DNA of 64,000 bases, from contig SMSO01000037.1 of assembly GCA_004764695.1 (NCBI GenBank), positions 1,712,747 to 1,776,746 on the forward strand, written 5' to 3'. Shown here piece after piece: positions 738 to 64,000 of the stretch. The stretch is from Schizochytrium sp. TIO01. Lineage: Eukaryota; Protista; Bigyra: Labyrinthulomycetes. A program made the translations under genes and the position numbers. The notes under the pieces are model-generated. The model saw nothing but the letters and a program-made list of their open reading frames with translations. It did not search any database and was not told the DNA's origin. How positions within the stretch are numbered: position 1 is the first letter of the stretch; every line of letters begins with the position of its first letter.

Positions 738-2681
738 CTTTTGAGTTCGCAAGGTGTGCGCGGCAGGGTAGAGACAGCACAAAGGCGCAGATCAGCGCGA
801 AAGATTTGATTCACTTCTGAGAGGCGTGACTCACATACGCATGATTTTACTCATAAAGAAAGAGAATCAACAAATTCGAACGATATAATCATTAAGACGC
901 ATACTTACCTACTTAGTACTAGTACCTGCTCTTGTGATTCAAGTTGATAGTTGATGCCCTTGGTCCGAGATGATCGTCATCTGCCGCGCTGTACTCTTGA
1001 AACTAGAGAAATCCACGAGATGTTAAATGAAGTTGATGTGTGGCGTAGCTCAAAACCAGTCGAAAAGGTCTTCTTGGGACGAAATTGGTTAAAGTGAGAG
1101 TGTGCGTTGAAGTATGATGATTACCTTTTGGCACACATTTACACAGAGCTCGTACATGGCCAGCAGCCTAGCTAGAGCTAGAATGAGCGCAGTCTCATAC
1201 TTTGCCAGCTTTGCTTAGGTTTCGTGTTAGTGGTCAAGATTATCTCGAAATGATTTTGCTTATGTGCTAGCACACTTGTGCTACCAACTTTATAGCCTTT
1301 TATTCATAAGGAAACTTGAGGCGGCCGGCTCCTCAATGATTTCTTGATGATCGTACTACCTATCAGATGACTATGATGATGGTGATGATGGTGGTGGAGT
1401 AGGTGAGATGCTGATGCAAGTTAAACGTTGCGGATTGGGTGAAGAGTGACTGGAGACTATACTACAACTTGGAAAACGAGATAGGTCTGTACTTGTAGTA
1501 TATGTGCGCACCTACCTAGACACCTTGCGCTCTGATCGCAATAATTTTGTCACTGAGCTGTGCTTGCGTTTGAAGACCTATATTCGACGCAACTTTCCGA
1601 TACAGAATTGATCACAATATCCATATCTCTCAAGGCCAACTTTGTGTATTCGTACCTCGCGAGCAGAATCAAGGCGAATGAACTGTACATTTTCATTGCG
1701 TCGCAGCAGCAGTCACATGGTGGTCTAGATTTTATTACCTTCAAGTTGTCCAGTAGTCTTGAGGTTTTGGTCGACCGTGTTACTTATGCTATAACAGTTT
1801 GGCCCTCGGAGCACAATAATCAGTGAGAAAAAAGCACTACCTAGTACATAGGAGTACAATCCACAAGTCAATTGCTCACCCAAGCACCCCTACAACCGCC
1901 AGACTTCGATGTGCCAGCTCATAACCAGTTACACTGCTACCTAGAATGCAGTTTCCTTGCATGATAAATGAGAGATTTCCTGACACCTGTCAGACTGCCA
2001 GAGAAGCGCAGATGGGCGTGCGACACTCATCATATGCTTCCAATCGCTTGCACCATAGCTTGTTTTTATTTATACTTCCATAAAAAGACCTCATTAACCT
2101 ACCGATTCATTAGTCCTGCGAAGTGGCCAGCGTTTCGATGAATCCCTTCTTCTTCACTTTTCATAGTAAAGCTGGGGCCCATCAATCAATTCCACCACAA
2201 CTAAGTTCAAGACAAAGGTCCCATAAACTCAAGTCTCTCTCTCCATTAACTGATTGAGACCAGCAACATTTGCCCAGAGTCTCCCAGATACTTGCAGAAA
2301 GAAGTCGACGCTGCTGACCCGTTGAAATACGAAGACGCCTTCACGCGAGATTGTGAATGCTTAATAAAAACGAGCAAAGCAGCGTACTGTTTAGCTTATG
2401 TAGTGAGTAGGAATCAGTAGGCTTGGCGAGAAGCAAAGTAAATGATCGATGAAAATACAGGTCCCTAATCTGTCTTTCGATAGACCAGCTAGACCAATAT
2501 CTCAGCTTGCCCTTGTACTCGCCTCAGTTGGCGGGTGGGCGAGCGAGCGGAGCAGAGGCGACGTGGCCAGGTCGGCGCTCGCTCCGAGCTTTACCTGGCG
2601 CGAGAGCGCTTTGGTCGTGCTCTGTAGGGTCGTGTGCACAAACGTTCGTCTTTCCTAGCATCGTCTTTATAGGCTGCCACC

Positions 2682-5600: not shown

Positions 5601-5711
5601 CCGTCCACCCGCGTGCGCTGGAATGGAAACGTAATGTCAATTGATGCTGATGCAGTAACCATTCCTTATGCCGACCTATTGGCTGGTGGCGACCTTGTGT
5701 TTCTTGCATAA
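2682..5711 (+). CDS. Glycoside hydrolase family 92 alpha-mannosidase (probably alpha-1,2) with N-terminal tail, single TM anchor and coiled-coil/Ala-rich stalk; 1009 aa, intronless
   Basis: GH92 motifs HQPSPWIGDYG, LYRGLLFP, GFWDAYR, YTEGGPWQYRFYVPHD, YAHNNQPVHH and GDEDNGEMSSWFVLSSLGLY. TM segment IFLALLMMIVWTFGGWMLFMSLG follows a basic tail. Start codon is in GCCACCATGG context. Confidence 0.93.
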   Translation: MESDAVRIEVGGRPSQFSSAWESTPRGSSSSANNSAVRANNQRRRGRANANNGTWKFMSSRNTPIFLALLMMIVWTFGGWMLFMSLGCEFFGGEDATSGPLARRTKSLQAMELENELEHARSKIISANEALLQRLRSEALVEARSQVAEELSEANAKAKRLENQVKAATQKAEAASVAAAKAEAAAAVQAATQAATANQDTALVSDFLMAERLDSETTTPATPKPTKVHQPTKQDTEESTGGITDILLREVREQQGDVVPKEVVPKDDFNAVQWVDVLRGTDNKNWRSLSRGNALPIISRPFGMTHWALTNVAGGEPWFFNPSRNNFAGIRCTHQPSPWIGDYGFFDVRPYYQRQLNTRAAKYNTGNAIFHPHHMVVSLTSECRSGSDCIKVELTPSERSAIFRIEYPPGGENGVQFAELKSLAVENEDGQTQVIRFSGHSRSKSVFDPPALMKHYAYIEVMAEDSRPLRFDANSGQVTWDANPSSRTIIHIRVGTSFINAKQAKLSMHRELGSTSGFDPSQFIRVREEGFNRWNNLLGRVRVTADSKEELENVQETLYSCLYRGLLFPRPLGEIDENGKLRHWSPFDMIHFYDGPIYTDSGFWDAYRAQYPMLHLIYPDLVVDIMEGWVNAIREDPSKMLTQWASPGRVGSMEGSMGEVSLAEAMINGALVGESADVAMDYIKRSATDTQVKNGRAHLADYDRYGYVPYVVRRDGTVSVSLNYYLSDAVDAMLAKSRGDTSLAKKLEDRSRQWRKLFDPSTKFFRPKRTDGTFVPNFNEHSWMGPYTEGGPWQYRFYVPHDPKGLRQAYEDAEPALPGQPSRLCQVLLDAMTRTGRVSNPDKIHEMLEMLQHSFGEYAHNNQPVHHVLYMFAHAGCPLDGQRYIHHTLRTQYGDFGYAGDEDNGEMSSWFVLSSLGLYSLVPGSGKYQVGAPPLYRTVTIHRPQSDPRGRRLGTLKIRREVPATTSPLKSFIPSTRVRWNGNVMSIDADAVTIPYADLLAGGDLVFLA

Positions 5712-6193: not shown

Positions 6194-9100
6194 TTACAGG
6201 TTGAACTCGGGTCCAACTACATCAGGAGATAAAAGACTTGCAAGGCGCTCATGTAGAATTTCCTTCAAATCATCACGAATATCATTTTGCCAATACGCTT
6301 GTAAGCGCTCCGCGCGAAGTGCCAACCATGCGCTCTGGACAGCTGAAAAGCTTTCAGGGAAGAAAGGGTCATGGTCTCGGCTCCCATTCTTCTCGCAATT
6401 TGCTACGTGTCGATGACAAGCGTCACTGGTGTTTCCAGTATCGCAGAGACACCATGCACAAAAGTAGCAATCACACGATCTGCACTTGAGGGCGCAGCAA
6501 CCGTCAAAGTCTGTGAATACTGTTTTACATCGAGGGCAACATGTGCACAATAAGTGATCTTGAATGTGTTTCATATGTACCACTGCCTCTCGATTGAGAC
6601 CATCCAGCTTGATGAATTCTTGAACTCGATGTTGAATCTCTCGCTCAGCCCGAATATCGGCATCATTTTCTATATGACCCTTGACTACTCTGATTAGTCG
6701 AGCAAATATCTCTTCTGGGATATGCCGAGCAATCGTTGACCCGGGGAAAATGCTATTGCAATTGTTTGCCATACAAGGCATAGCACCGTCCCTGGTCACG
6801 CGAACAAACCCCTCAGGATCTGACGCAGCCGAAACTGACGCAGCGAGGCAATCTTGACAGACAAAGTGCCCGCTGCCACAGACAGCACCATGCAAAGCAG
6901 GGTAGTTGTCCAGGCATATCATGCACGAAGCCAGCGAGACTGTTTGAATATCAAAAGCACGATGGCTCAAAGCATCTAATGCACTAATCCGTTGATCTGG
7001 ATCTTGAGCTTTCAAGCTTTGCTGGAGGTCTGCCATGAAAGCATCTGGTGTAGGGAAAAGCTCTTCAAGCAAGACCCCAAATGAGTACATATCCAACGAA
7101 GGCAACGCTCTGCTGATATCTCCTGCACGTAACTCAGGCGCCATGTAGGCTGTAGTAAGCTGTAACCCAATAGTAATTGTCCTGCTTGTATCTTGCGTCC
7201 CGTCGAAGTCTCCAATAATTGGCGACAAACTGTTCGTAAGGAAGATATTGGACGGTTTGATATCACAATGCACCTGTCCAGTCTTGTGAATGTCGTGGAG
7301 GCCTGTCAGAATTCCAATAGCAATACGCTTGCGAATTGTGTCAGTCACATGTACATTTTCATCTAGCAATTGTTTCAAAGTACCACGCGGATAGAATGGC
7401 ATCAAAATACAACCAAAGCTAAATCCTTGTGATGCAGTCGTAAAAATGCCGAAAGGTTGCACCACATGAGCGGACGAGATTCTGGCAATTGCAGTAGCTT
7501 GGCGTCCGAACTTTCCTGACATGGCAAAACTTGCCAGGGAAAACTTCTTCAGGACCTTTTTCGAGCCATCATTGTCTTGTACAAGTAGTACATGCCGGCC
7601 TACATTCTCGGAGAGTGTCTTCACGGTCGTCATGCTGCCCATTACAGATTCAGAGAGCCATATACCTAATGCACTTGCTTCAAGGAATGCCAAGTCTGAG
7701 ACCCCCACACTTTTACACCACTCTCGACTTTGCAAGAGTTCCGGGAAATGGTCTTGTGCAAGTCGAATTAGACGAGCTCGTTCTTTGCGAATAGAGCGAT
7801 CAAGCGCATAAGGTTCGATAGAACTAATTTTGGATTCTAGATCCTTCAACCTCTTATGGGTTTCTTTGGTCTTTTCCTCTTCATAGTCTTCTCTGGCCAG
7901 TTGAAGCTCTAGCTGAAGCCTCTTCAGCATCCGCCGATTCGACTTTTGTTCAGTCAAGAGAGCGTCTAACATGGAAATATCAGGTGCGTATTCGCCTTCT
8001 GATAGAACTCCAAGTAAGTCTGCAAACGCCTTTCTCACCTCGAGGAGTTTACTAATCGCATTAGGTATATAAATTTGTCTACATTCTACAACTGCGGCTG
8101 TAGCTAGGCGTAATCGAGCATTTGCTACATTGAAGCTGTGAAAATCGCTCTTGAGGAAGTTCAATTCCTCAGACAGCTTATCAAAAACATTAGCAATCTC
8201 GTACTGAAGCTTGTCGAATTGTCTTGGTCGTAGTAAAAAAGCTCCTACTCGATTCTCCACTCCCAGATCTTCCCCGCTTGTCTCCAGGGCAGCAATTGCA
8301 TCTTCCGTCTTCTTATATAGCGCTTTGGCTCGTTTCATTTCAGAAATATCCGTGATTGTCGTATAAGCCAGCTTGACCTTTGCAGTCACACGCTCAACCT
8401 GAATGGTAAATTGAGTCATAGAGCATGGTTGATAGATTTTGCCTGTTGGATGAGATTGATTATTCAAGGCGCCAGCAAATGACTGCACACCATTGACACA
8501 TTCGTCTAAGTTTTTAGCTAGAAACGTGCGAAGTAAGCCAAGAAGTTCATGCCGCTGCTGATTACGGAGCAATACAGCTTCATCGTGGTTATGAATAGAG
8601 TTATCTGTCCGCAAAACGCTTGCAGATTCGTTGAAATGATTAATAAGCTGCTCAATTTGAAGGTACTCTTTCTCGAGCTCGAGAAAGCGCTTCAATGAAT
8701 CAGTGTTGACAAACCCGATCCACTGAGCAAGAACCTCTACGGTGAGACTTTGTGCTCTTTTCTCGTATTTTTCACGTTCGTTTGCTGTTCCTTCAGCTAG
8801 TCGCATCACACCTGTAAGACTAGTCCGTTCATGTTCTTGTCTAGAAAATCAACACAATGTTAGGTCACATATAGATGAGCTATCATGAATCTAAAGCAAA
8901 CATACTCAAACTTACTTCTCCTTCAACAAAGCGCGATTTCGCGTGCTTGGCGCACTTAAAAAAGGCATTCTTATGTCGGTGCTGTCTGAGTATTCACGCA
9001 TGTGAAGGTAAGCGGTCATGATCCTGTTAGCTTAACCTATTGTCGTTACTATTCGTATATAGGCAGCAGATGCAACTTACCGTAGTTCTATCAGTGTTTT

Positions 9101-11286
9101 GTTATGCTTAAGGATATGATCAAAGGCTTCTGCATTGTAAATCGGATTCGTTTTTAGACTGAAGCGTGGAATAAGTAAATTTTGAAGTGAGAGTTGAACA
9201 CAATCATTAGTTCTCTGGCCAGGATATCAATAAACAAGTTCAAAAGCCCTCACACTTGCAATCGATCATATGAAACTCACTTTAAGTTTTTGAGCGTATC
9301 ATTTCGTTCCAAGGCCTTGCTTAGTGCGGCCGCACCATCAACGCCAATGTAATTATCTTCAAGGCTGCAATGATAATTTCCCCAAGGATTTTCCGTTAGT
9401 TCCGATTCAGAGCACCATGTAGCTAGCTAGCTATGCAGTTGTTGCTAATCACTTACTTAAGATATTCAAGAGTATAGTTTTCATGTAGGGCCTCTCCGAG
9501 GGCCAATGCTCCACTTTCACTTATGGAATTGTTCTCAAGACTTTAGAATAAAATTTCGTACTGAGATGATCGTCAGTTTCCTGAGACTTCCCCTTCATTC
9601 CGAATTAAATTCAACTTGAATTTCGCGTTCCATTTCAAGTTTGCTTTGCGAGATACTTACTTGAGCAATTCTAGCTTATGGTTTTGTTTCAAGGCTGTAC
9701 ATAAACCCAAAACACCACCGTCACCAATACAGTTGCTTTTGAGGCTGCAGTACTTGTCAGTTTTCCCATTGATATATCATTGTTCGAACAGCTTTATCTG
9801 TGAAGCTTACCAAAGTGTTGTTAGAGTATGGTTGTGTTTTAGAGCCTCTCCGAAAACCAAGGCACCATCTATACCAATCTTATTCCAATTCAGACTATGG
9901 ATGTGAAGTTAGTAATCACTCATTTGGCGAAAAGGGTTGTAGTCTATTGCAGTGGATTTCAATAGGTGTACAGCCACAAATACACTTACTTAAGAGATAA
10001 CAAGGCAGAGTTCTCCTTGAGAGCCTTAGCAAGGGCTGATGCACCGTTTTTCCCAATGTAATTATCTTCAAGACTTTCGAAAGTTCAACACAAACGTAAG
10101 TCAGCTAGCTAGCTTCTCAACATCAACAACACCCCGCTCTCTACCTAACTTACTTGAGGGTTAAGAGGGATGAATTTCGTTCAAGACCTTTACTGAGTGC
10201 CTCCGTGCCATTTTCGCCTATGGATGCGCACTTCAGACTGTAGTTCAAAATTTTGGGCGCACTTATAATTAGAATTCTGCTTATCTGCTAATCCCACAGT
10301 GTATAGGAAACTTACTTCAGGGAAACCAAAGTGCAATTTTGCTGTAGCATCTTACCGAAAGCTAAAGCACCATTGTCGCAAACTGGGTTGCGCTCGAGAC
10401 TGTTGTATTGCAAAGTGTTGAACTCCACCCCCCCCCGTTCTTACGTGTCAGTCATTGCCTGCACGCTAGCATTAGCCATTTCCAAACATACCTGAGTGAT
10501 GATAGAGTGCAATTCTCCTCAAGAGCCTTTGCAAGGGCTGTTGCTTCGTTCTCGCCTATAAAGTTGCGTTCAAGACTACAGCACCCGAATTTGGAATTGA
10601 AGAAAGGCGATGATGGTCAGTTCGCTCGTTAATGGCATGAAGGAGTCTGCATGTTTCCAATAGATCACAACGGGACTTACTTGAGAGACAGCAACGCAGT
10701 GTTCACCGTCAGAGCTGCTGCTAGTGCAAAAGCAGTTTCATCGCTGATGGAGCTCTTTTTCAGACTACAATTTTGAATTTTTGAAAATCGTCAGTTTTGA
10801 TTGAGGATGGGTGTATTCTAAACGACCATCGTAGAACTTACTTCAGAGATCCAAGCGTGTTATTGTGCTTGAGAATGTTAATGAGTCTGGATATCTGACT
10901 AATAGTCAGCTTGTTTCTTGAGAAGCTGCAATATCAAAGTATTCCAGGCGAAAACCAACAATTAGAATGTCCACCATTCAGCAACAAGCATGGCAGAGTG
11001 TGTTAGTTCACATCTTCGCAGCGCTTGTACGCACATGGCAGGTGCAGCCCTGTATAAACAACTTGTTTTCACAGTTGCGCTTCCCTCAGGCAACTTACTC
11101 GGCATCGGTTGCACCTGCAAGGACGTCCTCAAATCCATGTCTCGCTCCATCCTTTCACAAGTAGCCAAAAGTTAGGTGGTGTAGAAGGCTTCTTCAACAG
11201 CCTATATCTGTTGGTTTATGCAAAATCAAGGACGTTGATCGCAAGAACCGCGTCACGCAAGGCTTCTCGTTCTTGTCCACGCCCAT
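6194..11286 (-). CDS. Spliced LRR (RI-like, 11 repeats) - coiled coil - Ser/Thr kinase - RING1/RING2 (RBR-like) protein, about 1250 aa
   Basis: Hand-built exon chain: [11257-11286 and 11099-11151, tentative], 10842-10925, 10681-10764, 10492-10575, 10316-10399, 10154-10237, 9990-10073, 9811-9894, 9661-9744, 9457-9540, 9281-9364, 9081-9158, 8916-9023, 6194-8840. Total 3756 nt, open throughout. Donors are GTAAGT/GTGAGT/GTATGT/GTAAGC, with CTRAY branch points and YAG/AAG acceptors. The last exon has VLKKF, HCDIKPSN, DFD, YMAPE, DMYSFG and two Cys/His fingers. The 5' end above 10925 is uncertain. Confidence 0.88.
9081..10925 (-). repeat. Array of one-repeat-per-exon LRR modules (10 x 84 nt + 1 x 78 nt)
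   Basis: Translations in gene order: FSRNKLTISQISRLINILKHNNTLGSLN, LKKSSISDETAFALAAALTVNTALLSLN, LERNFIGENEATALAKALEENCTLSSLS, LERNPVCDNGALAFGKMLQQNCTLVSLN, LKCASIGENGTEALSKGLERNSSLLTLN, LEDNYIGKNGASALAKALKENSALLSLN, LNWNKIGIDGALVFGEALKHNHTLTTLC, LKSNCIGDGGVLGLCTALKQNHKLELLN, LENNSISESGALALGEALHENYTLEYLN, LEDNYIGVDGAAALSKALERNDTLKNLN, LKTNPIYNAEAFDHILKHNKTLIELR. Confidence 0.95.
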
Positions 11287-14200
11287 TCACAGCGCTTCAG
11301 TGTTTCTGGACTGTACGAGGGTCCGGTCCTATTTCTCTTAAAATTGAGAGCAGCGTGAGAACAAAGGGAACATATATTTAAACTTATGAAATCGCATTGG
11401 TAGCTAGAGTTATAGCTAGGCGCCCCTTTGTGAGACCTCGAGGATTTCAGACTAACATGAATTGAACAATCAGGCTTAAATGGCCGAGAAGTCATGGACC
11501 AAAATGTTGGCATGGATACTCCGCATAATTAAGAATAGAGGAATCTAAATTGATGGTTATATCACCTAAGCTCTTCAATTATAGATTAAGTGTGTCTTAG
11601 TCTCATAATTATCACATGCATCAGTATGCCTTCGAAATTAATTCCAAGGACAGCATCTCTAGCTCTTAAGGCCGTAGATCAAAGCTTCTTAGTGCTTCTT
11701 CAAGGCTCTTACCTTCATCTTTATAGTCAACCTTTATCTGCCAGATCCATCTTTGAGCAGATTTTAAGATCCAAAAGCTTCAAGTGATCTCAGGAAGGAT
11801 GAAGAATGAAACATCAACTGGCATTAGCATGTAAGATGCCGAGATTGGCATTGACTGAGTGATTAAAAAAAAATTAACTTGCAAAAAAATAATATACTGG
11901 ATAGCTAAGCAGAAGTATACATTATGAATACAAATGGAGTTTGTTGAGGTATATTTTGTGATGTTTTCGTATAGCACTCTGCATAAGAGAACACGGTAGT
12001 TTAGTTCAAGCGTTGTCTAAAGCAGGAGACAAAAATAATGACCATGGCTAGGAACTTCGCAAGACAGAGGCCATATGCCAAATCTTACCATAAACCCTAG
12101 TCAAACACTGAGAATACAATACCCAGCTTCAGTGTCACAAAAAGTCCTTCAGCATTCCAAAGCTCTTTAAGTCAACTAAATTGTGATTTTTCGCAAACCG
12201 TATGCTAAAGTGATAGATTTTTGTTAAACATTGAAGGCGGTAACAGTCCATATTTCTGTGCTCTGGGCAAACAACCATTATTCAGTAAATCAGTTCATTC
12301 CCACGACTCCAGTGCGAGACATATCTCAGTGCAGTTCCCAGAGGTTTCAAGAGAATTGGGAAGGGTAAAGTTTGAAGATTTATTCAAGATTGAATTGCTT
12401 GTTATTTAAACTTTGAGGGAAAGCAAATGATTTATAAACCTGCATGATTGAACCTGGCTCACAGACCCTTTGCAACAAATACACATGCAAACAAAATAAA
12501 TTTCAAAGAATCATTCTGCATCCAGGTACATGATAATTGGTCTTTTGAATCGCCGCGAAAGATCTCACTTGGTGTAATCCGTGTAGTTCATTCTTCTTAC
12601 TAATAGTTTAAGAGTCTATTGAAAAGTGTCATCGTAATCTGGCGCACGTCATGCTGCGACTTGGAGATATATTTAAACTACATATTGTCAAAATACGTTC
12701 AAGATATTTCCCAGTATCATAGGTTCAAGTTAAGGTGTTATTCCCAGATTCTGATTAGAGATGATAAAAACAGATCTTCCATCGAAAACAGAATTTCATA
12801 CCACTATCATCTCCACTCGAGAAATAATTTCATATGTTTTCCCTCTCCAAAGACGCAAACCCAACCCCTCGCTATGAGTGAATTGCTGCACAGTGAAAAG
12901 CACACACAGGTTCTATAAAATAATTCAAAACATTTTTCATGCATGAACGAGATAGCGCATATGGTTGGATTCTTTCTAACTGATAGGAGTTATATGACAA
13001 ACAGAAGCCATCAGCATGGCTCAGTATAGCTCAATGGCTAAATATAAGAAAGAAAAAGAATAGGCGCTAAGCTGTGGCATGTGTTAAATGTGCGCAGCGC
13101 TGAATTCTTTAGGATTTGCAAACATTAATTATCTGAAAAGGCAAGCCTTTCATGAGGAGCGGTCCAGCCTCGGTAAATTTCGCATTTTAAAGATTCGAAG
13201 GAGTGCAGTTATATCGTCTTCTCAGCAACTTGTCTTTACTTGAAGACAGTGGTCAGCACAGTTCATTTGCTTATGTGTTTACGGCGATTGCGCCATTCGA
13301 GCGTTGCTTCTAAATGTGGCGACGAAATTTTGGAGAAAATGAATTTCCAGCATAAAGGGTTAGAATATATATATATATAGATATGTGTCAAATCGTGAAC
13401 CACATTCTAGTCTAAGGAAAGAAGGTATTGAACAGGCTTTCACAATATTTGTGGATGTCCAAATACTGTATATACAAGACGAAGCTCAAATCCTCAACAA
13501 ACTTGAGCCCTACATGTTGTAGTCAATGTAAGTCGAACTTTAGTAGTTGTTGCTAAGAATCAGCGTCAGCATTTCATCAAAGGCTTGGAGAGGCGGTAAT
13601 AGACTGCAATGAGGAAACAAAATCAAGACTTTATGAAAAATTACGGAACAACCAAGTTTACTTGAAAATGTTAGATGAACTATGGTGAAGCTCTCTCATG
13701 GCCTGACGGTTTCCATTTAGTATGTTGAGCATAAAGTTGAGATCCAATGAACGACGGAGAGATCTCTTGGAAAAGAATTATTCCCAAGTTGGGTTCGTAC
13801 TGTTCTCAAGTGAATTGGTCTCAGGGGTGTGCGGAGGTCATTCGTGGATTGATGTGGACAAACTAACAAGATCGGCATATATTATTTTCCGTTGGAAGTA
13901 CAATTTCCTGACAAGGAACAAAATGCAAGAATCAACGCTAATTAGCTTTCCCTGCCGCACCCTGCTTGAAAAACAAGAAGACAAGAAACCAGACTGCGCA
14001 ACATCAGCCCTAGCATTTCAGAAATTTACTCCTTAGTGGAAGCCAGAGCTAGCTAGTTGAAGACGCTGCCGGCTTGCCAGCTTTCGTCATTATAAACCAG
14101 GACTTGACGCGAGGATAGATAGGAAGGAATATGTGGTTGGTTCCTAAAGGAGTTTTTTCCTTACTAACTAATCATTCACGCAGACTAATGGCGCAGGAAG

Positions 14201-14296
14201 ACACATGTATAGATCGCACAGACGACGACAGCGACGCCAGACCTTGACCAGGTGCATCTGTATTGCCACTACTTCGCCGCCACTGACTGCTGCACC

Positions 14297-14789
14297 GTGG
14301 CGGTAGGCAGGCAGGCAGGCAGGTTCCCTGGCAGTGCGTTGGCGCTATGAGTGGAATGGCTTGTACGCATGGAGAGTCTCCTCGCTCTGTGTGATCCCTC
14401 TGCGAGGTTTGGTCCAGTCTCGCACACCTGGGACCACGTCTCCTCCGTGCCTCCGCCTCCACGGATTGATTCCCTCGACTTCTTCCGCCGCCCCGAACGG
14501 TTTCCACGATCTGTCACGGTTGAGCAGAGCTCGGGCTTCCTCTTGTGAACACTCGTGGCTAACCAATCCTCGCCTGATGATTTTCATCATTAACCCTAAG
14601 CCCAAGAGCACCGAAGAGATTGAGGCAGCTCGTATTGCAGAACTCCGTGAAAGTCTTCGCGAGCGTCAGCTTGAGCCTGACAAGCTGGAGGAGCTCGCTA
14701 AAAAGGGCTTGCGAGATATTCTTCCCCCTGGTGATTATAACCGTCTCACTGCCCGGGACCCAACTCGCCCAATCTCAAGGCGTTCTTGA
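14297..14789 (+). pseudogene. Small two-exon gene or gene remnant (GTG GCG | intron 14303-14600 | 62-codon exon); possibly a decayed glutathione S-transferase
   Basis: 14601-14789 has coding-like codon usage (PKSTEEIEAARIAELRESLRE...). It is preceded by branch point GCTAAC at 14558-14563 and an AG-free stretch up to AAG at 14598-14600. Candidate donor GTAGGC at 14303 follows CACC-GTG-GCG. GST resemblance is by eye only. Confidence 0.45.
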
Positions 14790-15118
14790 CTTCGTGCAGC
14801 TCAAGCAATCCAGCCCATGCTTGCTCGCTCGCTTGCTGTCTCGCTGTCTTGCTGTCTGGCTGCCTTGCTGCCTTGCTGCCTTGCAGCCTTGCTGTCTGGC
14901 TGGCTGGGTAGATGAACGGCTCAGGAAGGACAGCTGCCGTTGCGGGCCCGCCTTGGCGATCGCTAGCCCGCCTGCCCGCCTGTCTCGGGCTCCCGCTTTG
15001 CGTGACTGAGCACGATCGCTTCCGGCTGGCAGCTTAGCCCTTAGCTATGCCCAGGCCTCCGAAACGGTCCCTGCAATTCCAGGGCCAATTCTTTGAGCCA
15101 GCGAATGCGAGAATGAGA

Positions 15119-17654: not shown

Positions 17655-17792
17655 TATGTATGTATGAATGTATGTATTATGTATGAATGTATGAATGTAT
17701 GTATGAATGTATGTATGAATGTATGTATGTATGAATGAATGAATGTATGAATGAATGTATGTATGTATGTATGAATGTATGTATGTATGTAT
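17655..17792. repeat. (GTAT/GAAT)n compound microsatellite
   Basis: Direct reading. Confidence 0.95.
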
Positions 17793-19296
17793 GGTATGGC
17801 CTCAACAACGGCGGTCGAGAAACTAAACGAAGCGGAGAGCAGCGTCGAGCTTGGAGAAACCAGGGAACGGAGCGGAGCGGCAGTCTGTCAGTCAGTCAGT
17901 CAGTCAGTCAGTCAGTTTGATCTGAGGCGGCGCCGATCGTCGGTTTGTCTGTAGCAACTGCGGCCAAAGCCTTCTTTCTCACGATGGGATGAAAGCGCAT
18001 CGTCGGAAAATCAATCCTAGTTTTATTATTTTTATTATTTTTATTATTTTTATTATTTTTAACTTGGAGGTGGAGAATGAGGGGTGAAAAGCATCATCAA
18101 ATTCCTTAGTCGCTTCAAAACGCTCTGTGCCGCTCATAAGTTTGAGGGCGATCGAGGCCTGTAGCATATATATGATATTACGATGATCGCGACTCGCTTT
18201 GGGGAGAGAAGCTTGACCCCGAATGCAAAGGGATCCACAACAATCACTCGCGAAGTGCAAAGGAAACAGTCTTTTTGATTATTTTATTAGAAAACAATAA
18301 AAAAAAATATATATATCTAAAAATATACCTTGATGGTGTATGATAACTATGAAGATGGAAATGAGATTGATTTCAGGAATAACAAGCTCCAAAAACCAAA
18401 CAAATTGGCGCCCTATTGGAAAGTCAGGCAATTGCGAGGGAAGATATCAGGGCGAGGAAGCTCTGCTCTGCGCGCAGAAGATCTTTTGGTTAAGATCGAG
18501 GTCATTCAGTAGTGATCTATCTGTTCATTAATCTATCTCTCAATCCATCCATCATACAAAACAAAAAGAAGAAAAAAAGAAAAAAGAAAAAAAGGAAAAA
18601 GAAAAAGAAAAAGAAGCTGGGGCTGGACATTGTTCGAAGCAAAAGCAGTATCCCTGTATTCTAAAAATGTTTAAACTAAACCAACAATATTTATGAAACT
18701 AAGGGACTCGAGAAATGCATTTGTGCAGCTTACACTTTTCTAATTAGATTATAATGCCTTCTGCATAGGTAGGTTACCTACTGCTAGCGCACTTTTAGAT
18801 GGTGAGACTAGGGACACCGAGAGTGAATCGTTACACAATTAATTCTACTTAATTCATTCATTAATTAATTAGGTAATTAATTATCCTACTACGTGCGACG
18901 CCAGTTTGCGCTCGTATTTGCAGCGGTGTTTACATATCCCTGTTTCCTGAAAGGAGGATGGATAATAAATAGTAGGAAGCTTTGTTGGCCTTGCCAGAGC
19001 GGCTCTGAAACGTGCGAAAGCTGCAGGATTCCAACCCGCCTCGTTCTGAAGACCCTTCTGAGATGAAGTCTCAAAGATTCAACACCGCTCTGTATCTATT
19101 TATCTCTCTGTATGTATACATATATATATAATCCTCATGTTTGTTTTGGGATTAAAAAAAAGAAAAGGGTATAAAAAAAAGTTTAAGGCAGATGAATAAC
19201 AAGAGAGAGAAACCTAATTCGCTACTCTCAAGTTTGAGAGAGGGAGGAAGGGAGTATACATATAATAAATTAGATTAAAATAACATTAGAATTAAA

Positions 19297-19351: not shown

Positions 19352-19969
19352 AGTAAAGAAGAGAAAAGAAGACGTCTGGCAAAAAGCTTTGGAAAATGCA
19401 AGAACAACAAACAAACAAACAAACAAGCAGGGAAAGGTTTGGGGCCGCTGGTCGGTCTCAGACTGATCTCGCGGCGGCCCTCGCCACACTAGACGCCTCA
19501 CAGAAGGATGGGAAGTCCTCCTTTGGGGCCGCCGTCGCTCGGTTAGCGCGGCCTTTTCTGCATCTGAGACCCACGCTCTTTGGCCCCTCCATCACAAGAG
19601 TCGATCGAGGCGATGAAAACTCTATTCTTATGCATCATTACGCAGTTTGTTCGAGACAAGCAACGTTTATTTCTTGCTTGCTTTCTTTCTTATTCATTTT
19701 AATAAGTTTAAATGCACATAACAGGAAGGGAAAGAATCGATCGATGTTCGTTTGTTTTGACCCGCGTAAGTAAATAGAGAGGAATTGCAGGTCTCGTTTT
19801 TAATCCTTCAAGTTGCCTTTTCTCTGCCTTCGGCTGCTGGAGTCCTTAGAGCTCCCGCGGAGACTGCCGAAATGAGTGCGTCAAGTTGGGATAGGCGCGG
19901 AACACGAGGCTCATTCTCGCTCTTCTTTTTTTCTGCTGCTGTCGCGGAGACTGGAAGCACTGAGTTAGT

Positions 19970-20094
19970 TATTTCTTTATTTCTTTATTTCTTTATTTCT
20001 TTATTTCTTTATTTCTTTATTTCTTTATTTCTTTATTTCTTTATTTCTTTATTTCTTTATTTCTTTATTTCTTTATTTCTTTATTTCTTTATTT
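19970..20094. repeat. (TTTCTTTA)n octamer repeat, about 15 perfect copies
   Basis: Direct reading; alternating TTTC/TTTA tetramers. Confidence 0.97.
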
Positions 20095-59000: not shown

Positions 59001-59729
59001 TTTCATCGTTTCCTATCATATTCTAACAACGATACAACATTCATATTTTGTCGTAAGTGTATGTTATATTTTTTTGTTCGAGAGCACCAAAGTATAATTC
59101 TGTATCGCTGTCAATTTTGAGCTTTTTTTTAATATACTTAATTTTTTTTAATTTTAAAAAAAAAATTGGAAGCAGTAATATGTGAACTTTTCTCTTTCTT
59201 TTCTCTTTTTCATTTAAACAAAGAAATGTTTGTTACTTTTAACGTAAATTATACTTTTGCCTTTTAATTTTAATAAATTGACTTTTTATAGTTGTAGAAT
59301 GTTTTGCTTTCCTTTTTTCCTCCAAGAAAAGCGGATATTCTTTTTTAAGTACATGGGTACTTTAAACCGTGAATAAAAGAAAAACAGAGATCAAGAACGA
59401 ACTTGATTTAATTCGGGCTCTAGTCGCAGGAAGGTAAGCTCAAAAAACTATTGAAGGACCATTGTCCCTCGATTGCTCAGATAAATTGATTGATTGTTTA
59501 GATTTTAAAACATTATTTATTTAATTATTTTAATTTTTCATTCAATCGCTCGGAAGGGCCCGGCGGAGACTGCTTGGAGACAGATTCGAAACGCATCAAA
59601 GAGAAAACAAAGAAAGAGCTGCGCCCGGGAACTTTCAATGCCTTTATAGACTTCGTGTGGAGAAGGTTTTGATCGATTCATGTATATAGATCCGCATGAG
59701 AAACATTGGAAACATTGGTCCACTCCCTA

Positions 59730-60325
59730 GTCTTTCTCTCTCTCTCTCTCTCTCTCTCCCTCTCTCTCTTTTTTAACGTTTTAGAAAGTTAAAAACAAAA
59801 ATTTTAAGCAATGAATGAGCCATACTCCTTTCTCCTTCTTTTTTCTTTCCTTCTCAGCTTCTTCTCCCTCTCTCTCCCTTTCTCTCCGTCCCTCTCTCTC
59901 ACTCTATCATGTTTCCTTCCCCCTTCTTTCTCCTTCTGTGCGCTCCTTCGCATTCTTCTCTCCTCTTTGTTGTTGTTTTGTTGTTTTCGTTGTTTGTTGT
60001 TGTTGCATTTAATTTTGTTTGCTTTTTGTTTGTTTTTTCCCTGCTATTGTTTCTTTCTTCTGAGGCGATTGTCTCTCAATTTTTAAACAAAGCGGAAACG
60101 GCGGGCACAGACAAACCTGATATACCTGCGCGAGCGAGGAGGAGAAGGCGGATCAGCCGGAGCTCGAGATTGGCGAGCAGCAGAGACCTAACAGCTAGCT
60201 CGTGCCACCCAGGCGAACAGGACCGCAAGCTGGCGTTCGTCTCGCGACAAGGCTTCACCCGACAGCACTCGCGCTCCCGGCAGCACTCGCGCACTCGTTG
60301 ACCTGCGCACTTCATTCACTCATTG
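59730..60325 (+). promoter_or_regulatory. Putative promoter of the AP2 gene: (CT)n/pyrimidine tract, GC-rich island, Inr-like TTCATTCACTCATT at 60311-60324
   Basis: Composition switches at the point where plus-strand ATG depletion begins, and tandem YCAYT initiator-like motifs are present. Inference only. Confidence 0.45.
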
Positions 60326-62218
60326 AGAGTACGAGTCAATAGTTTGTTTGTTTGTTTGTTTGTTTGTCTCTTTTCTGAGGACAAGAGAAGAAAAGGGAAA
60401 CTAACACAGGAGACCCACCTCATTCTTAGCAGTAGTTATCAAGCACCCGCGACGAGAACAACAAAAACACGAAGCGCGACAGCTTGAGAAGAACCGAGAC
60501 GAGAGCAAACGAAGGCAAAGGCAGGCGCCACGGAGGCTTGAGAAGAACTGGCAGACGGGCTGCGGCTTATCAGGAGTTCGTGAGCTGCTGGGCTCTGTAC
60601 CTATCTGTTGTCTACTACGAGTAAAGGACCATTCGAACAGGCTCGGTAAGGTTGACTTTGCTGGCGCTGGTACTGGCGAGAGAACAGAAGTCCACTTTGC
60701 TGTGAGCAGTATCTGAGGCTTGCTGCTGACCTACTGCTGCTGCTGCTGCTGCTGCATTGGAGCGCACTGGGAATTCCCGTCAGGTGGGGTCTCTGCAGCC
60801 TTGCACGTTGCAGTGAACCGCACCAGGAACGGTGTCGCGCAGTGGGTTTAGAGATTTTGATTCGTTCATTAATTTTGCTGTGGCAGGTGACTAAATTTGC
60901 CCAGAAACTCTTGCAAAAGCTGACGTTAGGCAAGTCCAAGTGGACTCGAAGTGCGGACCCATAAACCTTGACGTTTCTGGCTTGCTTTACTGCTGGTCAG
61001 GCCGCCTGACTTCCTCTCGTCTGCTTTGGCCCTTTCAGAAAGAACTTGCTCAATCGCTCTAGCTAAGAGCTCATTTCATTATACATCTACGGCACGTGCC
61101 GAGATTTAAGGACAACAGCTGAGCAAAGCTAAAGAGATTCACTACAATTAAGGCGGCGGGAACTGCTTACGATATAGAAGAAAACTCGATCAATTTGATT
61201 GTTCTTCATCTACAACCGGAGGACCAGCGAGTACACGCGTACACACCAGCATATTATTTGAGAGCTTTAGGTGTATTGAGACAGAGAGAGAGAAGGCACC
61301 ACACTCAAGTAGAAGCTGGTCTAGTAAACAGCTTCTGTCGTGGGACCTCAAAACACTAGGGAATACCCAGGAGTAAATTCTCGTGCGTTGTTTCTCTAAT
61401 CGTTGTCTTCTGCTACAGCGGACTAGCGAGGACACCGCAACGCTTTCAAATAGCTAATCTACAGGTATCGCGCCAGAGTTCGATTTGGCCCTGGCGGACA
61501 CAACAGTTAAGAGCTTCATCGCTAGCAGTAGGTAACAGAGGCCGAGCCTTCCGTTGGTGGCGCATACTTAACACCTTTCCATACTATCCCCTATATATTC
61601 AGGCACAGGCTCATTGCGCTCGCTGCTGCTACACTTTTGACAAACACTTCGCTAGGTCAATTATCGCAGCTGTGCTAATCATCAGAAAGCTCAAATAGCG
61701 TTGTTCAGGCTTAATTTTCAAGCTAGACCACTACTGTCTAGAAGTAAAAGCGTTCAGTCTTCCCTGAACACCACCAAGAAGCCCAAGCTCAATCGCCTGT
61801 ACAGATTGTGCCTAGTTTTGTACCGCGCACCTACCAGGTCGCCTTCGAACTCTGCTTGAGTTCTTCCGAAGTAGTGGACGGCGTGGCCATAGCTCTAGAG
61901 CAGAGATCCGAGGAAACAGCAAGAACCTCGAACAGACCTTGCTGTAGCGGAACCGACACAAGTTATCTTGTGTGCGAAGAGCTCCTAGCACCACCACAGG
62001 AAGTGCACTCTAGCGAGCTAGATTGCTGGTGCAAGCCTGGAGTGGCACCACCAAGAGTAATCGAACACCTTGTCAGCCCTCCGAAAGTCCCACAAGAGGA
62101 CCGGAAAATCAGTTTTTGCGTTTTCCGAGGACTGCATACTTTTCACTTTGGCGGTGGACCCCGTTGCCAGCAAGCAGGCAGGCGTGAAGCAGCCCTAGCA
62201 GCAGCTTCACGAGCTTGA

Positions 62219-62347
62219 ATGAGATCTCCCGGTCACGGCGAACTGAACCCTATCAGCATCCAGGCATCGCCCCCGCGAGACTTCCGGGCCCAGGCGAGCG
62301 CAACGACGATCAACAGCAAAAGAAAAGAGAATTACAAGTGCTATTAG
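62219..62347 (+). promoter_or_regulatory. Upstream ORF, 42 aa (MRSPGHGELNPISIQASPPRDFRAQASATTINSKRKENYKCY)
   Basis: The only plus-strand ATG found between 59912 and 63087; ends at TAG 62345-62347. Confidence 0.55.
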
Positions 62348-63087
62348 TACAACTCAGGAGGAAAGCGAGACCCGGAACCTCTCGTCTCTCCTCTGCAGAC
62401 ATTGCTTCAAGAACAGATAGCTCCTCGTGCCGTAGCTCGCAACTGGAGTATTATTCAACCAACTAACACCGTTCTCGACCCACACTCTGTAATCCCGGTA
62501 CTGTTCTAGGTGATTACTAGTTAACTTGCATCACATCACCAACTACTGTGGTCATTTGCTGCAGTGTTTCTGCTGGTGCTTTTTGTACTTATCTCGTTGT
62601 TATTCTAATTAGGTTCGAAAGCAGCCAAAGAAGACTTAGGCATTCTGTGTGTTTGTCTCTGTATAAAGTAAGAAAAAGAAACGGATCGAACTCCGCACAA
62701 ACCGAGTCGTTGGCTCACCTGTGGTGCTCTTTGGTTATTGTTTTGTACTCAATTAACTTGTTGACCTGGTTGACTCATATCATTCCTACAGCAGTACATT
62801 GTTCAAGCAAAATAGGCTTTTAGTCTAAAATCTGATATAGCCTGTGCTTTAGGGATAAGCATAGCCATTTAGTTTACCTAATCGTCATCTCACTAAGGCA
62901 CTCACTCTACCAACGTGGCTATCAAGAGCACATACACATCAGCAAGAAAGGCATAAATATTGAAGCTTTTCTCTGGAAATTCTAAAGTACTAGCCCCATA
63001 GGGATTCACTTTTACCCAAATTTGCCGTCAACTGATCTCAGATCTGGTTTAAGAATCTCCCAACCGCGCAAGTCTACGAGCACTTGG

Positions 63088-64000
63088 ATGAGCGATCGAT
63101 ACGGAAGAAAGCAGAACCCGCATCATTCGCAGAGCACTCCAGATAGTGCCACAAGTCGAGGAGATAGCGACTCAGACAGAGACTCCTCCGGAACCTCTCG
63201 GGGTGCGCCACCCGCACCCCAGCCATCAAACAGGTTTTCTCCATCAGACGGCCAGGGAACAGGTGCAACAGCGAGAGGATTTTCGCGTGGCAACTCCCAT
63301 CTGCCTGACCGCAGCCCAACCTTTCCTGGTGGCACAGAAATGGCATCTTCGCTCGGCGTGCTCTCTGCCAATCAGAACAGCGCAATGTTAACAAACGTTA
63401 ATCCTGCAAACTTCAAATCAAGTATGCTAGGCGCTGGACCTACAGCGGGAGCTGGTCCCGGGCAGCTTGGCAGGGGTCATTTCTCTTCTAAATCCATGAT
63501 GCCGTCATCATCTGCTGGCGTTGGTAGACCTGGCGGCGCAAGTGAAATGCCAAGGCCCAATATCAAACGTGAGCACAAGAACATAGAAGATAGCCCTGAT
63601 GTGGAACCAGTTGCTACACACACTCGCTCCAGTAATAAGCGTTCCCGTGTCACAAGTTGCAGTCGCAAGTTCTCTGCAGAAGACGATGCTAGTGACCACA
63701 GCTCTGAGCCGCCTTCGGATGCTCCCATCGACAGGAACTCTCCAAGTCGAGCTGGTGGTACACAACGTAGAGCATCCAGCCGATACCGCGGTGTTTGTTG
63801 GCTGAAAAAACGTAAAGCATGGCGGGCGCGTATTGAAATTGATGGTGTGCGGAAGCATTTGGGCTACTTCAATGACGAGGTTGCTGCCGCTCGAGCATAT
63901 GATGCTCGCGCAAGAGAAACCCTTGGTCTTTCTGCTCGCCTTAACTTTCCCGATGAGGAAGAACGCGAAGCTGCCGCTGCGGCCTCCAGAGCATCAGCAA
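63088..64000 (+). CDS. AP2/ERF (ApiAP2-like) domain transcription factor, 3'-truncated by the window edge
   Basis: Open frame from ATG 63088 to the window end (304 codons; absent from the ORF track because it has no stop). A Ser/Gly/Pro-rich N-terminus is followed by SSRYRGVCWLKKRKAWRARIEIDGVRKHLGYFNDEVAAARAYDARARETLGLSARLNFP at 63775-63951, a textbook AP2 domain. Confidence 0.95.
   Translation, partial: MSDRYGRKQNPHHSQSTPDSATSRGDSDSDRDSSGTSRGAPPAPQPSNRFSPSDGQGTGATARGFSRGNSHLPDRSPTFPGGTEMASSLGVLSANQNSAMLTNVNPANFKSSMLGAGPTAGAGPGQLGRGHFSSKSMMPSSSAGVGRPGGASEMPRPNIKREHKNIEDSPDVEPVATHTRSSNKRSRVTSCSRKFSAEDDASDHSSEPPSDAPIDRNSPSRAGGTQRRASSRYRGVCWLKKRKAWRARIEIDGVRKHLGYFNDEVAAARAYDARARETLGLSARLNFPDEEEREAAAAASRASA

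What the first reader, a model, noticed from the sequence alone, without database searches (positions are those of the whole stretch)
59912..63087. 3.2 kb with a single plus-strand ATG before the AP2 gene: an exceptionally long AUG-purged 5' leader
Reading 59912-63087 by eye I find one ATG on the plus strand (62219) against roughly 38 CAT (minus-strand ATG). About 50 would be expected at 1/64. The depletion is strand-specific, ends at the AP2 start codon, and spans sequence with stops in all frames and few microsatellites. Introns would not be under this constraint, so the simplest reading is a mostly unspliced, scanned 5'UTR of about 2.8-3.2 kb under selection against upstream AUGs. That implies strong translational control of this transcription factor.
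Basis: partly seen in the sequence, partly recalled or inferred. Interest (0 to 1): 0.82.

Follow-up and report, generated by a model that had tools for sequence, protein, structure and literature searches.

The report
Three-kilobase ATG-free leader before AP2 gene
About 3 kb of unique DNA in front of a thraustochytrid protist's AP2 transcription-factor gene holds a single ATG on the gene's strand where about 30 are expected, most likely because it is a very long mRNA leader that ribosomes scan to reach the start codon.

Summary
Window 59912-63087 has 1 plus-strand ATG (62219) and 38 CAT. Dinucleotide-preserving shuffles give 29.7 ATG (minimum 17 in 2000), so P is about 4e-12. No other trinucleotide on either strand shows a comparable gap.

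The desert starts where GC steps from 0.41 to 0.49, after a pyrimidine tract. It is single copy, has no consensus splice donor, no Rfam match and no unusual RNA folding. It runs into a single-exon, 694-codon AP2-domain gene.

The best reading is a scanned 5' leader of at least 2.7 to 3.2 kb, kept free of AUG by purifying selection.

New here: the surviving uAUG and the first ORF AUG (63088) both have weak context. The next six ATGs are all in frame, the first of them (63340) in strong context. No out-of-frame ATG occurs for 511 nt. This suggests leaky scanning.

No RNA data or orthologous loci could be reached, so the transcript structure is inferred. "Strong translational control" is not shown.

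The scan has already noted the same signature before many unrelated genes of this genome (2-8 kb deserts). This is therefore one member of a genome-wide class and is not specific to transcription factors.

The parts
59701..60069 (+). Pyrimidine-rich tract ((TC)n, TCTCCCTCTC repeats, then (GTT)n/T-rich) just upstream of and overlapping the onset of the ATG desert. Putative promoter or TSS-proximal region (inferred).
   Evidence: Sequence; TRF arrays at 59731-59769 and 59863-59905; GC 0.39; last upstream ATGs at 59811, 59815 and 59909.
59912..63087 (+). Strand-specific ATG desert, the proposed 5' leader of the AP2 mRNA. The informative part is 60070-63087, with 1 ATG against 29 expected.
   Evidence: GC 0.491 against 0.407 in the 50 kb upstream. 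Single copy in the genome. No Rfam family. Folding z-scores average -0.16. 0 GT[AG]AGT donors.
62219..62347 (+). The only upstream AUG. It opens a 42-codon uORF (MRSPGHGELNPISIQ...) in weak context (T at -3, A at +4) and ends 740 nt before the first ORF AUG.
   Evidence: translation, context. Local fold not unusual (z +0.94).
63088..64000 (+). 5' part of the AP2-domain ORF. The whole ORF is 694 codons in a single open frame, ending 1172 nt beyond the window at L002:5919. The first AUG at 63088 is in weak context (T -3, A +4).
   Evidence: Pfam AP2 42.1 bits against a cut-off of 33.3, two stretches. 84% identity over the AP2 domain to a Hondaea fermentalgiana protein.
63088..63598 (+). Zone inside the ORF with seven in-frame ATGs (63088, 63340, 63385, 63424, 63496, 63499, 63547) and no out-of-frame ATG. 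63340 has strong context (G -3, G +4). Candidate leaky-scanning 'safe zone' and alternative starts.
   Evidence: 7.1 out-of-frame ATGs expected from the rest of the same CDS (P about 8e-4). Codon shuffle gives mean 3.4 and P(0) = 0.014. Found post hoc.
63778..63957 (+). First AP2 DNA-binding domain (residues about 231-290: SRYRGVCWLKKRKAWRARIEIDGVRKHLGYF...AAARAYDARA). The second AP2 stretch (residues 551-585) lies beyond the window at about L002:5485-5589.

Best explanation
The stretch is the 5' leader of the AP2-gene mRNA. Transcription starts just after, or within the end of, the pyrimidine tract. The TSS most likely lies near 60,070-60,100 and, at 95%, no further downstream than about 60,380. 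The transcript runs unspliced into the single-exon ORF, giving a leader of about 2.7-3.2 kb. Small ribosomal subunits load at the cap and scan linearly. Any AUG in the leader would capture them, so purifying selection has removed ATG in all three frames on the sense strand only, while every other word, including near-cognate start codons, is left alone. One uAUG survives, in weak context and far (869 nt) from the ORF start. It is probably bypassed by leaky scanning, or followed by re-initiation, or is a young and slightly deleterious mutation. The first ORF AUG is itself weak. It is followed by an in-frame AUG ladder with a strong-context AUG 252 nt downstream and no out-of-frame AUG for 511 nt. 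Initiation is therefore probably shared between 63088 and 63340 (or later AUGs), giving N-terminal variants of the factor. Shown: the statistics, the boundaries, the composition step, uniqueness, the lack of a donor motif, the lack of structure, and the identity of the gene. Inferred: transcription of the region, the TSS, the absence of splicing, scanning, and use of alternative starts.
For: ATG 1 against 29.7 expected, minimum 17 in 2000 shuffles; CAT 38, as expected. Only ATG is affected: CTG 72 against CAG 72, ACG 26 against 34, TTG 82 against 61. 473 sites in the stretch are one substitution away from ATG, so the state needs continuing selection. The desert abuts the first ATG of a 694-codon ORF that passes the Pfam AP2 threshold. 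Its onset coincides with a GC step from 0.407 to 0.491, close to the CDS value of 0.512, while the 4 kb downstream of the stop is back to 0.421 with 22 ATG/kb. No GT[AG]AGT occurs on the sense strand, whereas the neighbouring LRR-kinase gene shows 11 such donors in 2.3 kb. The stretch is single copy and not a repeat or transposon, with no Rfam family. Weak contexts of 62219 and 63088 and the in-frame ladder are; this architecture is described for human mRNAs with weak starts (PMC7397870). An AUG-free track that enables 900 nt of leaky scanning is known in RTBV (PMC5902531). uAUG depletion by purifying selection that scales with Ne is general (PMC7889888).
Against: No RNA evidence of any kind was available: no TSS, no coverage, no splice information. 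No orthologous locus could be fetched, so conservation of the desert is untested (look-up of encoding contigs closed; metagenome scans empty). The zero count of donor motifs is not significant on its own (1.55 expected). The Kozak rules for this organism are assumed from other eukaryotes. The in-frame ladder was found post hoc with P of 0.001-0.014. My only control outside the window (89 kb of contig C1) turned out to be a virus-like element.
Confidence: 0.65

Rival explanations
1. Dispersed or alternative transcription starts. The gene uses several TSSs spread over about 3 kb, so most mRNAs carry much shorter leaders and the desert is the union of all of them, not one routinely scanned 3-kb leader.
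For: The sequence signature is identical under this model. Nothing separates one distal TSS from many. The GC-rich, gene-like composition holds throughout.
Against: The distal part (60.07-61 kb) is purged as cleanly as the proximal part (0 ATG in 60070-62218 against 18.1 expected), so distal starts must still yield translated mRNAs that matter for fitness. There is only one sharp composition and pyrimidine-tract boundary, at about 60.07 kb.
Confidence: 0.17
2. Partly spliced leader. One or a few introns lie inside the stretch and lack ATG by chance or because they are often retained. The mature leader is then shorter.
For: Introns exist in this genome (LRR-kinase gene, about 70-330 nt spacing). 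Loose donor-like GTAAG/GTGAG sites exist at 60580, 60646, 60702 and 62668, with possible branch and acceptor partners. Another scan note (s1-853274, untested here) proposes a spliced leader for a Myb-like gene.
Against: No GT[AG]AGT consensus donor occurs in 3.2 kb. Unconstrained intron sequence should carry about 1 ATG per 55-100 nt, so only short introns could hide. The AP2 ORF and the GH92 ORF in the window are uninterrupted.
Confidence: 0.1
3. The depletion is unrelated to start-codon selection on the AP2 mRNA. Examples would be a separate sense non-coding RNA kept free of AUG, a DNA-level constraint, or a mutational bias.
For: None positive. It remains only because transcription was not observed.
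Against: The effect is confined to one trinucleotide on one strand and ends at an ORF start. Other reverse-complement pairs differ by less than two-fold. TGA (35 against 52.9 expected) is mostly a by-product of the missing ATGA. There is no Rfam match and no structure signal.
Confidence: 0.04
4. Chance or base composition.
For: The first 158 nt (59912-60069) are A-poor and would lack ATG anyway.
Against: P is about 4e-12 for the whole stretch. 0 of 2000 shuffles fell below 17 ATG. The longest ATG or CAT gap elsewhere is 542 nt in the rest of the window and 605 nt in 89 kb of another contig.
Confidence: 0.001

Closest known systems
General depletion of upstream AUGs in eukaryotic 5' UTRs (purifying selection, stronger at large Ne; PMC7889888; summary in PMC12338608)
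   Same: Same principle: sense-strand AUGs upstream of the main start are deleterious under cap-dependent scanning and are removed.
   Different: Different in scale and completeness. Typical leaders are 100-250 nt and observed/expected ratios are moderately below 1. Here the ratio is about 0.03 over about 3 kb.
Long 5' UTRs of apicomplexan mRNAs, including developmental regulators (Toxoplasma median 713-800 nt; PMC12338608)
   Same: Kilobase-range leaders in a protist, here on an AP2-domain factor.
   Different: Opposite AUG content: 90% of Toxoplasma leaders carry uAUGs (median 5) and selection against them is weak. The thraustochytrid leader is purged. The AP2 domain here is closest to plant ERF-type and thraustochytrid sequences in my search; I did not test any relation to the ApiAP2 family.
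AUG-free tracks for leaky scanning in viral polycistronic RNAs (RTBV ORFs I-II, about 900 nt; PMC5902531)
   Same: A long stretch without AUG in any frame lets 40S subunits pass to a downstream start. Weak or moderate context at the first starts.
   Different: The viral track is coding and about 900 nt. This one is a non-coding cellular leader about three times longer, plus 511 nt of ORF free of out-of-frame AUG.
Weak annotated start followed by an in-frame, strong-context downstream AUG (human mRNAs; PMC7397870)
   Same: 63088 (T -3, A +4) is followed by in-frame 63340 (G -3, G +4) with out-of-frame AUGs avoided between and beyond.
   Different: Single-gene observation, post hoc, with no ribosome profiling. 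Six consecutive in-frame AUGs over 511 nt is a longer ladder than usual.
uORF-regulated leaders of the GCN4/ATF4 type and AUG-burdened leaders of vertebrate regulatory genes (Kozak 1991, PMC2289952)
   Same: A long leader on a regulatory gene. One uORF is present, far enough upstream to allow re-initiation.
   Different: Those leaders work through several uAUGs/uORFs. This one has almost none, so uORF-based control is at most minor.

Membership tests
Scanned, uAUG-depleted 5' leader | Sense-strand ATG depletion relative to composition-matched expectation, not mirrored on the antisense strand | tested here: met
   1 against 29.7 (shuffles), CAT 38 against about 36.
Scanned, uAUG-depleted 5' leader | Depleted stretch is contiguous with the start codon of a real protein-coding ORF on the same strand | tested here: met
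   Ends at 63088, the first ATG of a 694-codon ORF with Pfam AP2 at 42.1 bits.
Scanned, uAUG-depleted 5' leader | The stretch is transcribed as part of the capped mRNA (TSS upstream of it) | not testable with these tools
   No RNA data. Indirect support only: the GC step and pyrimidine tract at the desert's onset.
Scanned, uAUG-depleted 5' leader | Exonic throughout (not removed by splicing) | tested here: inconclusive
   0 GT[AG]AGT donors against 1.55 expected. The neighbouring gene has 11 in 2.3 kb. Four loose GTRAG sites remain.
AP2/ERF-domain transcription factor (Pfam PF00847) | Match to the AP2 profile above the curated threshold | tested here: met
   Full protein 42.1 bits against 33.3, two stretches. 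The N-terminal 304 aa alone score 20.1 bits. 36 AP2 matches in the genome.
AP2/ERF-domain transcription factor (Pfam PF00847) | Sequence-specific DNA binding | not testable with these tools
   Not assayed.
uORF-mediated translational switch (GCN4/ATF4-like) | Several uORFs whose spacing sets re-initiation at the main ORF | tested here: not met
   Only one AUG-initiated uORF (62219-62347), in weak context.
Structured leader or IRES-type element | RNA folding clearly more stable than shuffled controls, or a match to a known RNA family | tested here: not met
   57 windows of 150 nt: mean z -0.16, none below -2.3. Rfam: only a chance-level hit, E 0.77.
Leaky-scanning multi-start mRNA | First AUG in weak context, downstream in-frame AUG in strong context, no intervening out-of-frame AUG | tested here: met
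   Statistical support is modest (P 8e-4 or 0.014, depending on the null model) and post hoc.
Leaky-scanning multi-start mRNA | Two or more N-terminal protein isoforms actually produced | not testable with these tools
   Needs initiation-site profiling or N-terminal proteomics.

The most novel reading that the evidence does not exclude
Thraustochytrid 43S complexes routinely scan multi-kilobase leaders under a near-absolute first-AUG rule. Kilobase AUG-free leaders would then be a genome-wide layer of gene architecture. On this AP2 mRNA the 3-kb leader, a weak first AUG and an in-frame AUG ladder together would set the ratio of N-terminal isoforms according to initiation stringency. This would make the locus a natural test-bed for in vivo scanning processivity, about three times beyond the roughly 900-nt AUG-free track (RTBV) that was the longest I found described.
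Probability: 0.3. Interest if true: 0.75.

Novelty: new variant of a known kind. Interest (0 to 1): 0.6.

Why it matters
Scanning is the accepted way eukaryotic ribosomes find start codons, but how far a 40S subunit can scan in vivo is known mostly from artificial leaders and from viral tracks of about 1 kb.

A natural 3-kb leader kept almost free of AUG shows that selection sees AUGs 3 kb upstream of the start codon. That implies mRNAs with the full leader are translated by linear scanning.

If RNA data confirm it, this locus and its relatives in the same genome give a tractable system, in a culturable and transformable protist, to measure three things: scanning processivity, the cost of a single uAUG as a function of distance, and the reason some genes carry such leaders at all.

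For annotation, it is a warning that gene models in thraustochytrids may miss kilobases of 5' UTR. It also shows that ATG deserts can be used to predict transcription units and strand.

Tried and rejected
1. Genome-wide census of ATG deserts. No census and no look at the 36 AP2 paralogue loci was possible. C1 also proved to be a virus-like element, so it is a weak control. It does show no ATG or CAT gap above 605 nt.

Two metagenome scans gave no orthologue; L012 is an unrelated HNH-AP2 ORF. Protein relatives share only the AP2 domain, so the N-terminus and start codon cannot be settled by conservation.

3. Known RNA families: none.

4. RNA structure in the leader: not different from shuffles. 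An apparent structured window just after the start codon (z -4.4 with 40 shuffles) fell to z -2.3 with 200 shuffles, so I dropped it.

5. Repeat or transposon origin: rejected, since only simple-repeat matches occur elsewhere.

6. Hidden coding sequence in the leader: ORFs 59909-60301 and 61808-62218 have no Pfam match. The longest stop-free run, 156 codons, is within chance.

7. Near-cognate start depletion: none.

8. An intron around the lone ATG at 62219: the only nearby donor-like site, GTGAAG (read by eye), departs from the GTAAGT consensus seen in this genome, so the idea is unsupported.

9. Literature on thraustochytrid leaders or uAUGs: nothing found.

10. Chance or composition: rejected.
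Full report
OBSERVATION

The recount is exact. Window 59912-63087 (3176 nt) holds one plus-strand ATG, at 62219, and 38 CAT.
- The two ATG-free runs are 2310 nt (59909->62219) and 869 nt (62219->63088).
- These are the longest and second-longest ATG gaps in the window. The next is 432 nt, and the longest CAT gap is 542 nt.
- No other trinucleotide has a gap above 1501 nt.
- A dinucleotide Markov model expects 29.8 ATG. 2000 dinucleotide-preserving shuffles give 29.7 +/- 4.4 with a minimum of 17. Poisson P(<=1) is about 4e-12.
- CAT is at expectation.
- Near-cognate starts are not depleted: CTG 72 against CAG 72, TTG 82 against CAA 61, ACG 26 against CGT 34. The mild TGA deficit is largely the arithmetic consequence of missing ATGA.
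- The first 158 nt (59912-60069) hold only 7 A, so they would lack ATG anyway. The informative stretch is 60070-63087, with 1 ATG observed against 29.0 expected.
- 473 positions in the stretch are one substitution away from ATG. Near-absence therefore requires continuing purifying selection and is not a historical accident.

ORGANISM AND SETTING

The window is G000:C36:1712747-1776746 of a 64.07-Mb, 37-contig genome.
- The best relative of the downstream protein is a Hondaea fermentalgiana protein, and another scan note calls the genome a thraustochytrid.
- The genome size, and a 289-kb contig of about 38% GC (on the 89 kb sampled) that carries ribonucleotide reductase, split Rpb1-like genes, many ORFans and a 5298-codon ORF, resemble Aurantiochytrium limacinum with its roughly 300-kb mirusvirus-like element (10.1101/2023.06.15.545109; PMC12606086). 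I did not prove the species.

Gene map of the window:
- a V-SNARE gene (minus strand, 69-782);
- a GH92 glycosidase (plus strand, 2682-5711, start context GCCACCATGG);
- an LRR-kinase gene (minus strand) whose large exon is 6194-8806 and whose upstream LRR exons are separated by introns, with 11 GT[AG]AGT donor-motif sites on that strand between 8915 and 11098;
- about 48 kb (11.3-59.7 kb) with no recognisable gene. It has GC 0.407, many micro- and minisatellites, no Pfam hit above threshold in its ORFs, and only repeat pieces of 210 bp or less shared with the rest of the genome;
- the ATG desert and the AP2 gene.

ANATOMY OF THE LOCUS

- 59701-60069 is pyrimidine-rich: (TC)n, TCTCCCTCTC repeats, then (GTT)n. 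The last upstream ATGs are at 59811, 59815 and 59909.
- At about 60070 the sequence turns complex. GC steps to 0.491, close to the CDS value of 0.512. Downstream of the stop codon GC falls back to 0.421 and ATG returns to 22 per kb.
- The desert is single copy in the genome; only the simple repeats match elsewhere.
- It has no Rfam match beyond a chance-level hit.
- It folds no better or worse than shuffled sequence: 57 windows of 150 nt give mean z -0.16, none below -2.3.
- It has stops in all frames and no ORF with a Pfam match.
- It has no GT[AG]AGT donor on the sense strand. Zero against 1.55 expected is not significant alone. An unconstrained intron would also carry about one ATG per 55-100 nt, so only short introns could be hidden.
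- If untranscribed DNA carries ATG at the expected rate (about 1 per 104 nt), the most distal TSS lies no further downstream than about 60,380 at 95%. The upper bound is 59,912. The leader is therefore about 2.7-3.2 kb, with a best guess for the TSS of 60,070-60,100.

THE GENE

From the ATG at 63088 a single open frame of 694 codons runs to L002:5919.
- The whole protein passes the Pfam AP2 threshold (42.1 bits against 33.3), with two AP2 stretches at residues about 231-290 and 551-585.
- Only the first AP2 domain is conserved with the nearest relatives: 84% with the Hondaea protein and 72% with a protein from a public sequencing-run assembly.
- The genome has at least 36 AP2 matches.

NEW OBSERVATION AT THE START CODON

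- The surviving uAUG (62219, cttgaATGa) and the first ORF AUG (63088, cttggATGa) both lack a purine at -3 and G at +4. This is the 'weak' class, which only a small fraction of scanning subunits recognise (rule as summarised in PMC5902531).
- The uORF has 42 codons and ends 740 nt before 63088.
- After 63088 the next six ATGs (63340, 63385, 63424, 63496, 63499, 63547) are all in frame. 63340 has G at -3 and G at +4. The first out-of-frame ATG is at 63599.
- The rest of the same CDS has 22 out-of-frame ATGs, which predicts 7.1 in those 511 nt (P about 8e-4). Shuffling the codons of the region predicts 3.4 (P(0) = 0.014).
- This matches the architecture described for human mRNAs with weak annotated starts (PMC7397870). 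It suggests that a good share of initiation happens at 63340 or later.
- It is a post hoc observation with moderate support, and it assumes that Kozak rules hold in this organism. The in-frame stop at 62983 and the 84 open codons between 63088 and 63340 argue that 63088 is used at least sometimes.

MECHANISM

The only explanation I can find that fits a depletion specific to one word and one strand, and anchored on a start codon, is selection against upstream AUGs on an mRNA translated by cap-dependent linear scanning.

The data do not show 'strong translational control'. An AUG-free leader without special structure is a permissive leader. What is unusual is its length and the efficiency of the purge.

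Why the leader is so long is open. Three possibilities, all conjecture:
- the TSS is dictated by the pyrimidine tract at the edge of the gene-poor region;
- the leader carries binding sites for RNA-binding proteins or makes translation helicase-dependent;
- the 3 kb holds DNA-level regulatory elements that happen to be transcribed.

RIVALS

- Dispersed TSSs over the 3 kb would leave the same signature. The distal 2.1 kb is as clean as the proximal part (0 against 18.1 expected), so distal starts must still give translated mRNA.
- A partly spliced leader is possible only with short introns.
- A cause unrelated to translation has no positive support.
- Chance is excluded.

RELATION TO KNOWN BIOLOGY

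- uAUG depletion is universal in kind (PMC7889888), but here the observed/expected ratio is about 0.03 over about 3 kb.
- The longest well-studied protist leaders (Toxoplasma, median 713-800 nt) are the opposite: rich in uAUGs (PMC12338608).
- The closest mechanistic analogue is the 900-nt AUG-free track of RTBV (PMC5902531).
- I found no paper describing kilobase AUG-free leaders in thraustochytrids. That is an absence within the searchable library only.

EARLIER NOTES OF THIS SCAN

The same signature has been noted elsewhere in this genome:
- ATCase, 2.2 kb;
- two Myb genes, 7.5 and 4.8 kb;
- Zn2Cys6, 1.5 kb;
- CBP/p300, 3.65 kb;
- 14-3-3, 2.4 kb;
- AdoMetDC, 1.05 kb;
- nine ALMT-like paralogues, 0.4-1.7 kb;
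- the first 8.7 kb of a giant ORF.

I could not re-test any of them, so they are leads and not support. If they hold, this locus is one mid-sized member of a genome-wide class that is not restricted to transcription factors or gene deserts. Within my own data, the other complete genes (GH92 in this window, and the C1 ORFs) have ATG-free upstream runs of 10-246 nt.

LIMITS

- There were no RNA data.
- No orthologous DNA was found.
- No spliced model had to be joined, because the ORF is a single exon.
- Nothing in the window looks human.

VERDICT

I rate it a new variant of a known kind, at interest 0.6.

Noticed in passing
window 6194-11300 (minus strand): The 870-codon kinase ORF (6194-8806) is only the last exon of a larger LRR-kinase gene. 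Upstream lie short LRR exons separated by introns, with 11 GT[AG]AGT donor-motif sites between 8915 and 11098 and CTAAC-like branch sites where I read the sequence. This gives a splice-donor consensus for the genome.
   Followed up: partly
window 11300-59700: About 48 kb without any recognisable gene. GC is 0.407, micro- and minisatellites are dense (for example (TATG)36 at 17655-17798 and (TTATTTCT)16 at 19969-20094), ORFs have no Pfam hit above threshold, and only repeat pieces of 210 bp or less are shared with the rest of the genome. It is not transposon-rich and its function is unknown.
   Followed up: partly
L003-L011 (G000:C1:200001-289439): Contig C1 (289,439 bp) is gene-dense on the 89 kb sampled and about 38% GC there. 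It carries a class I ribonucleotide reductase large subunit, Rpb1-like RNA polymerase genes in pieces, many ORFans and a 5298-codon ORF. It looks like a mirusvirus-like or giant-virus-like element of the kind reported as a roughly 300-kb circular element in Aurantiochytrium limacinum.
   Followed up: partly
L003:7690-9564, and C1 sample coordinates 10316-12334 and 13173-15062: Three tandem paralogous ORFs (624-672 aa) with the identical start context TTAGACAAG|ATG|GAG on the virus-like contig. No Pfam match for the one tested.
   Followed up: no
window 63200-63222: A perfect 8-bp GC hairpin (GGGGTGCG/CGCACCCC) lies about 110 nt after the first ORF AUG. The surrounding 150-nt window gave z -4.4 with 40 shuffles but only -2.3 for 181 nt with 200 shuffles. 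It is probably not meaningful and is too far from the AUG for the classical pausing effect.
   Followed up: yes
window 2673-2685: The GH92 glycosidase gene starts in a textbook Kozak context (GCCACCATGG) behind a 230-nt ATG-free run. This hints that purine at -3 and G at +4 matter in this organism.
   Followed up: no
L012:9671-10228: A metagenome contig found with the AP2 alignment encodes an HNH-endonuclease-like motif fused to an AP2 domain (the bacterial or phage type). It is unrelated to the thraustochytrid gene.
   Followed up: partly
window 61808-62218: A 136-codon non-AUG (GTG) open frame ends with the TGA immediately before the lone uAUG at 62219. There is no Pfam match and its length is within chance. 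Probably coincidence.
   Followed up: partly
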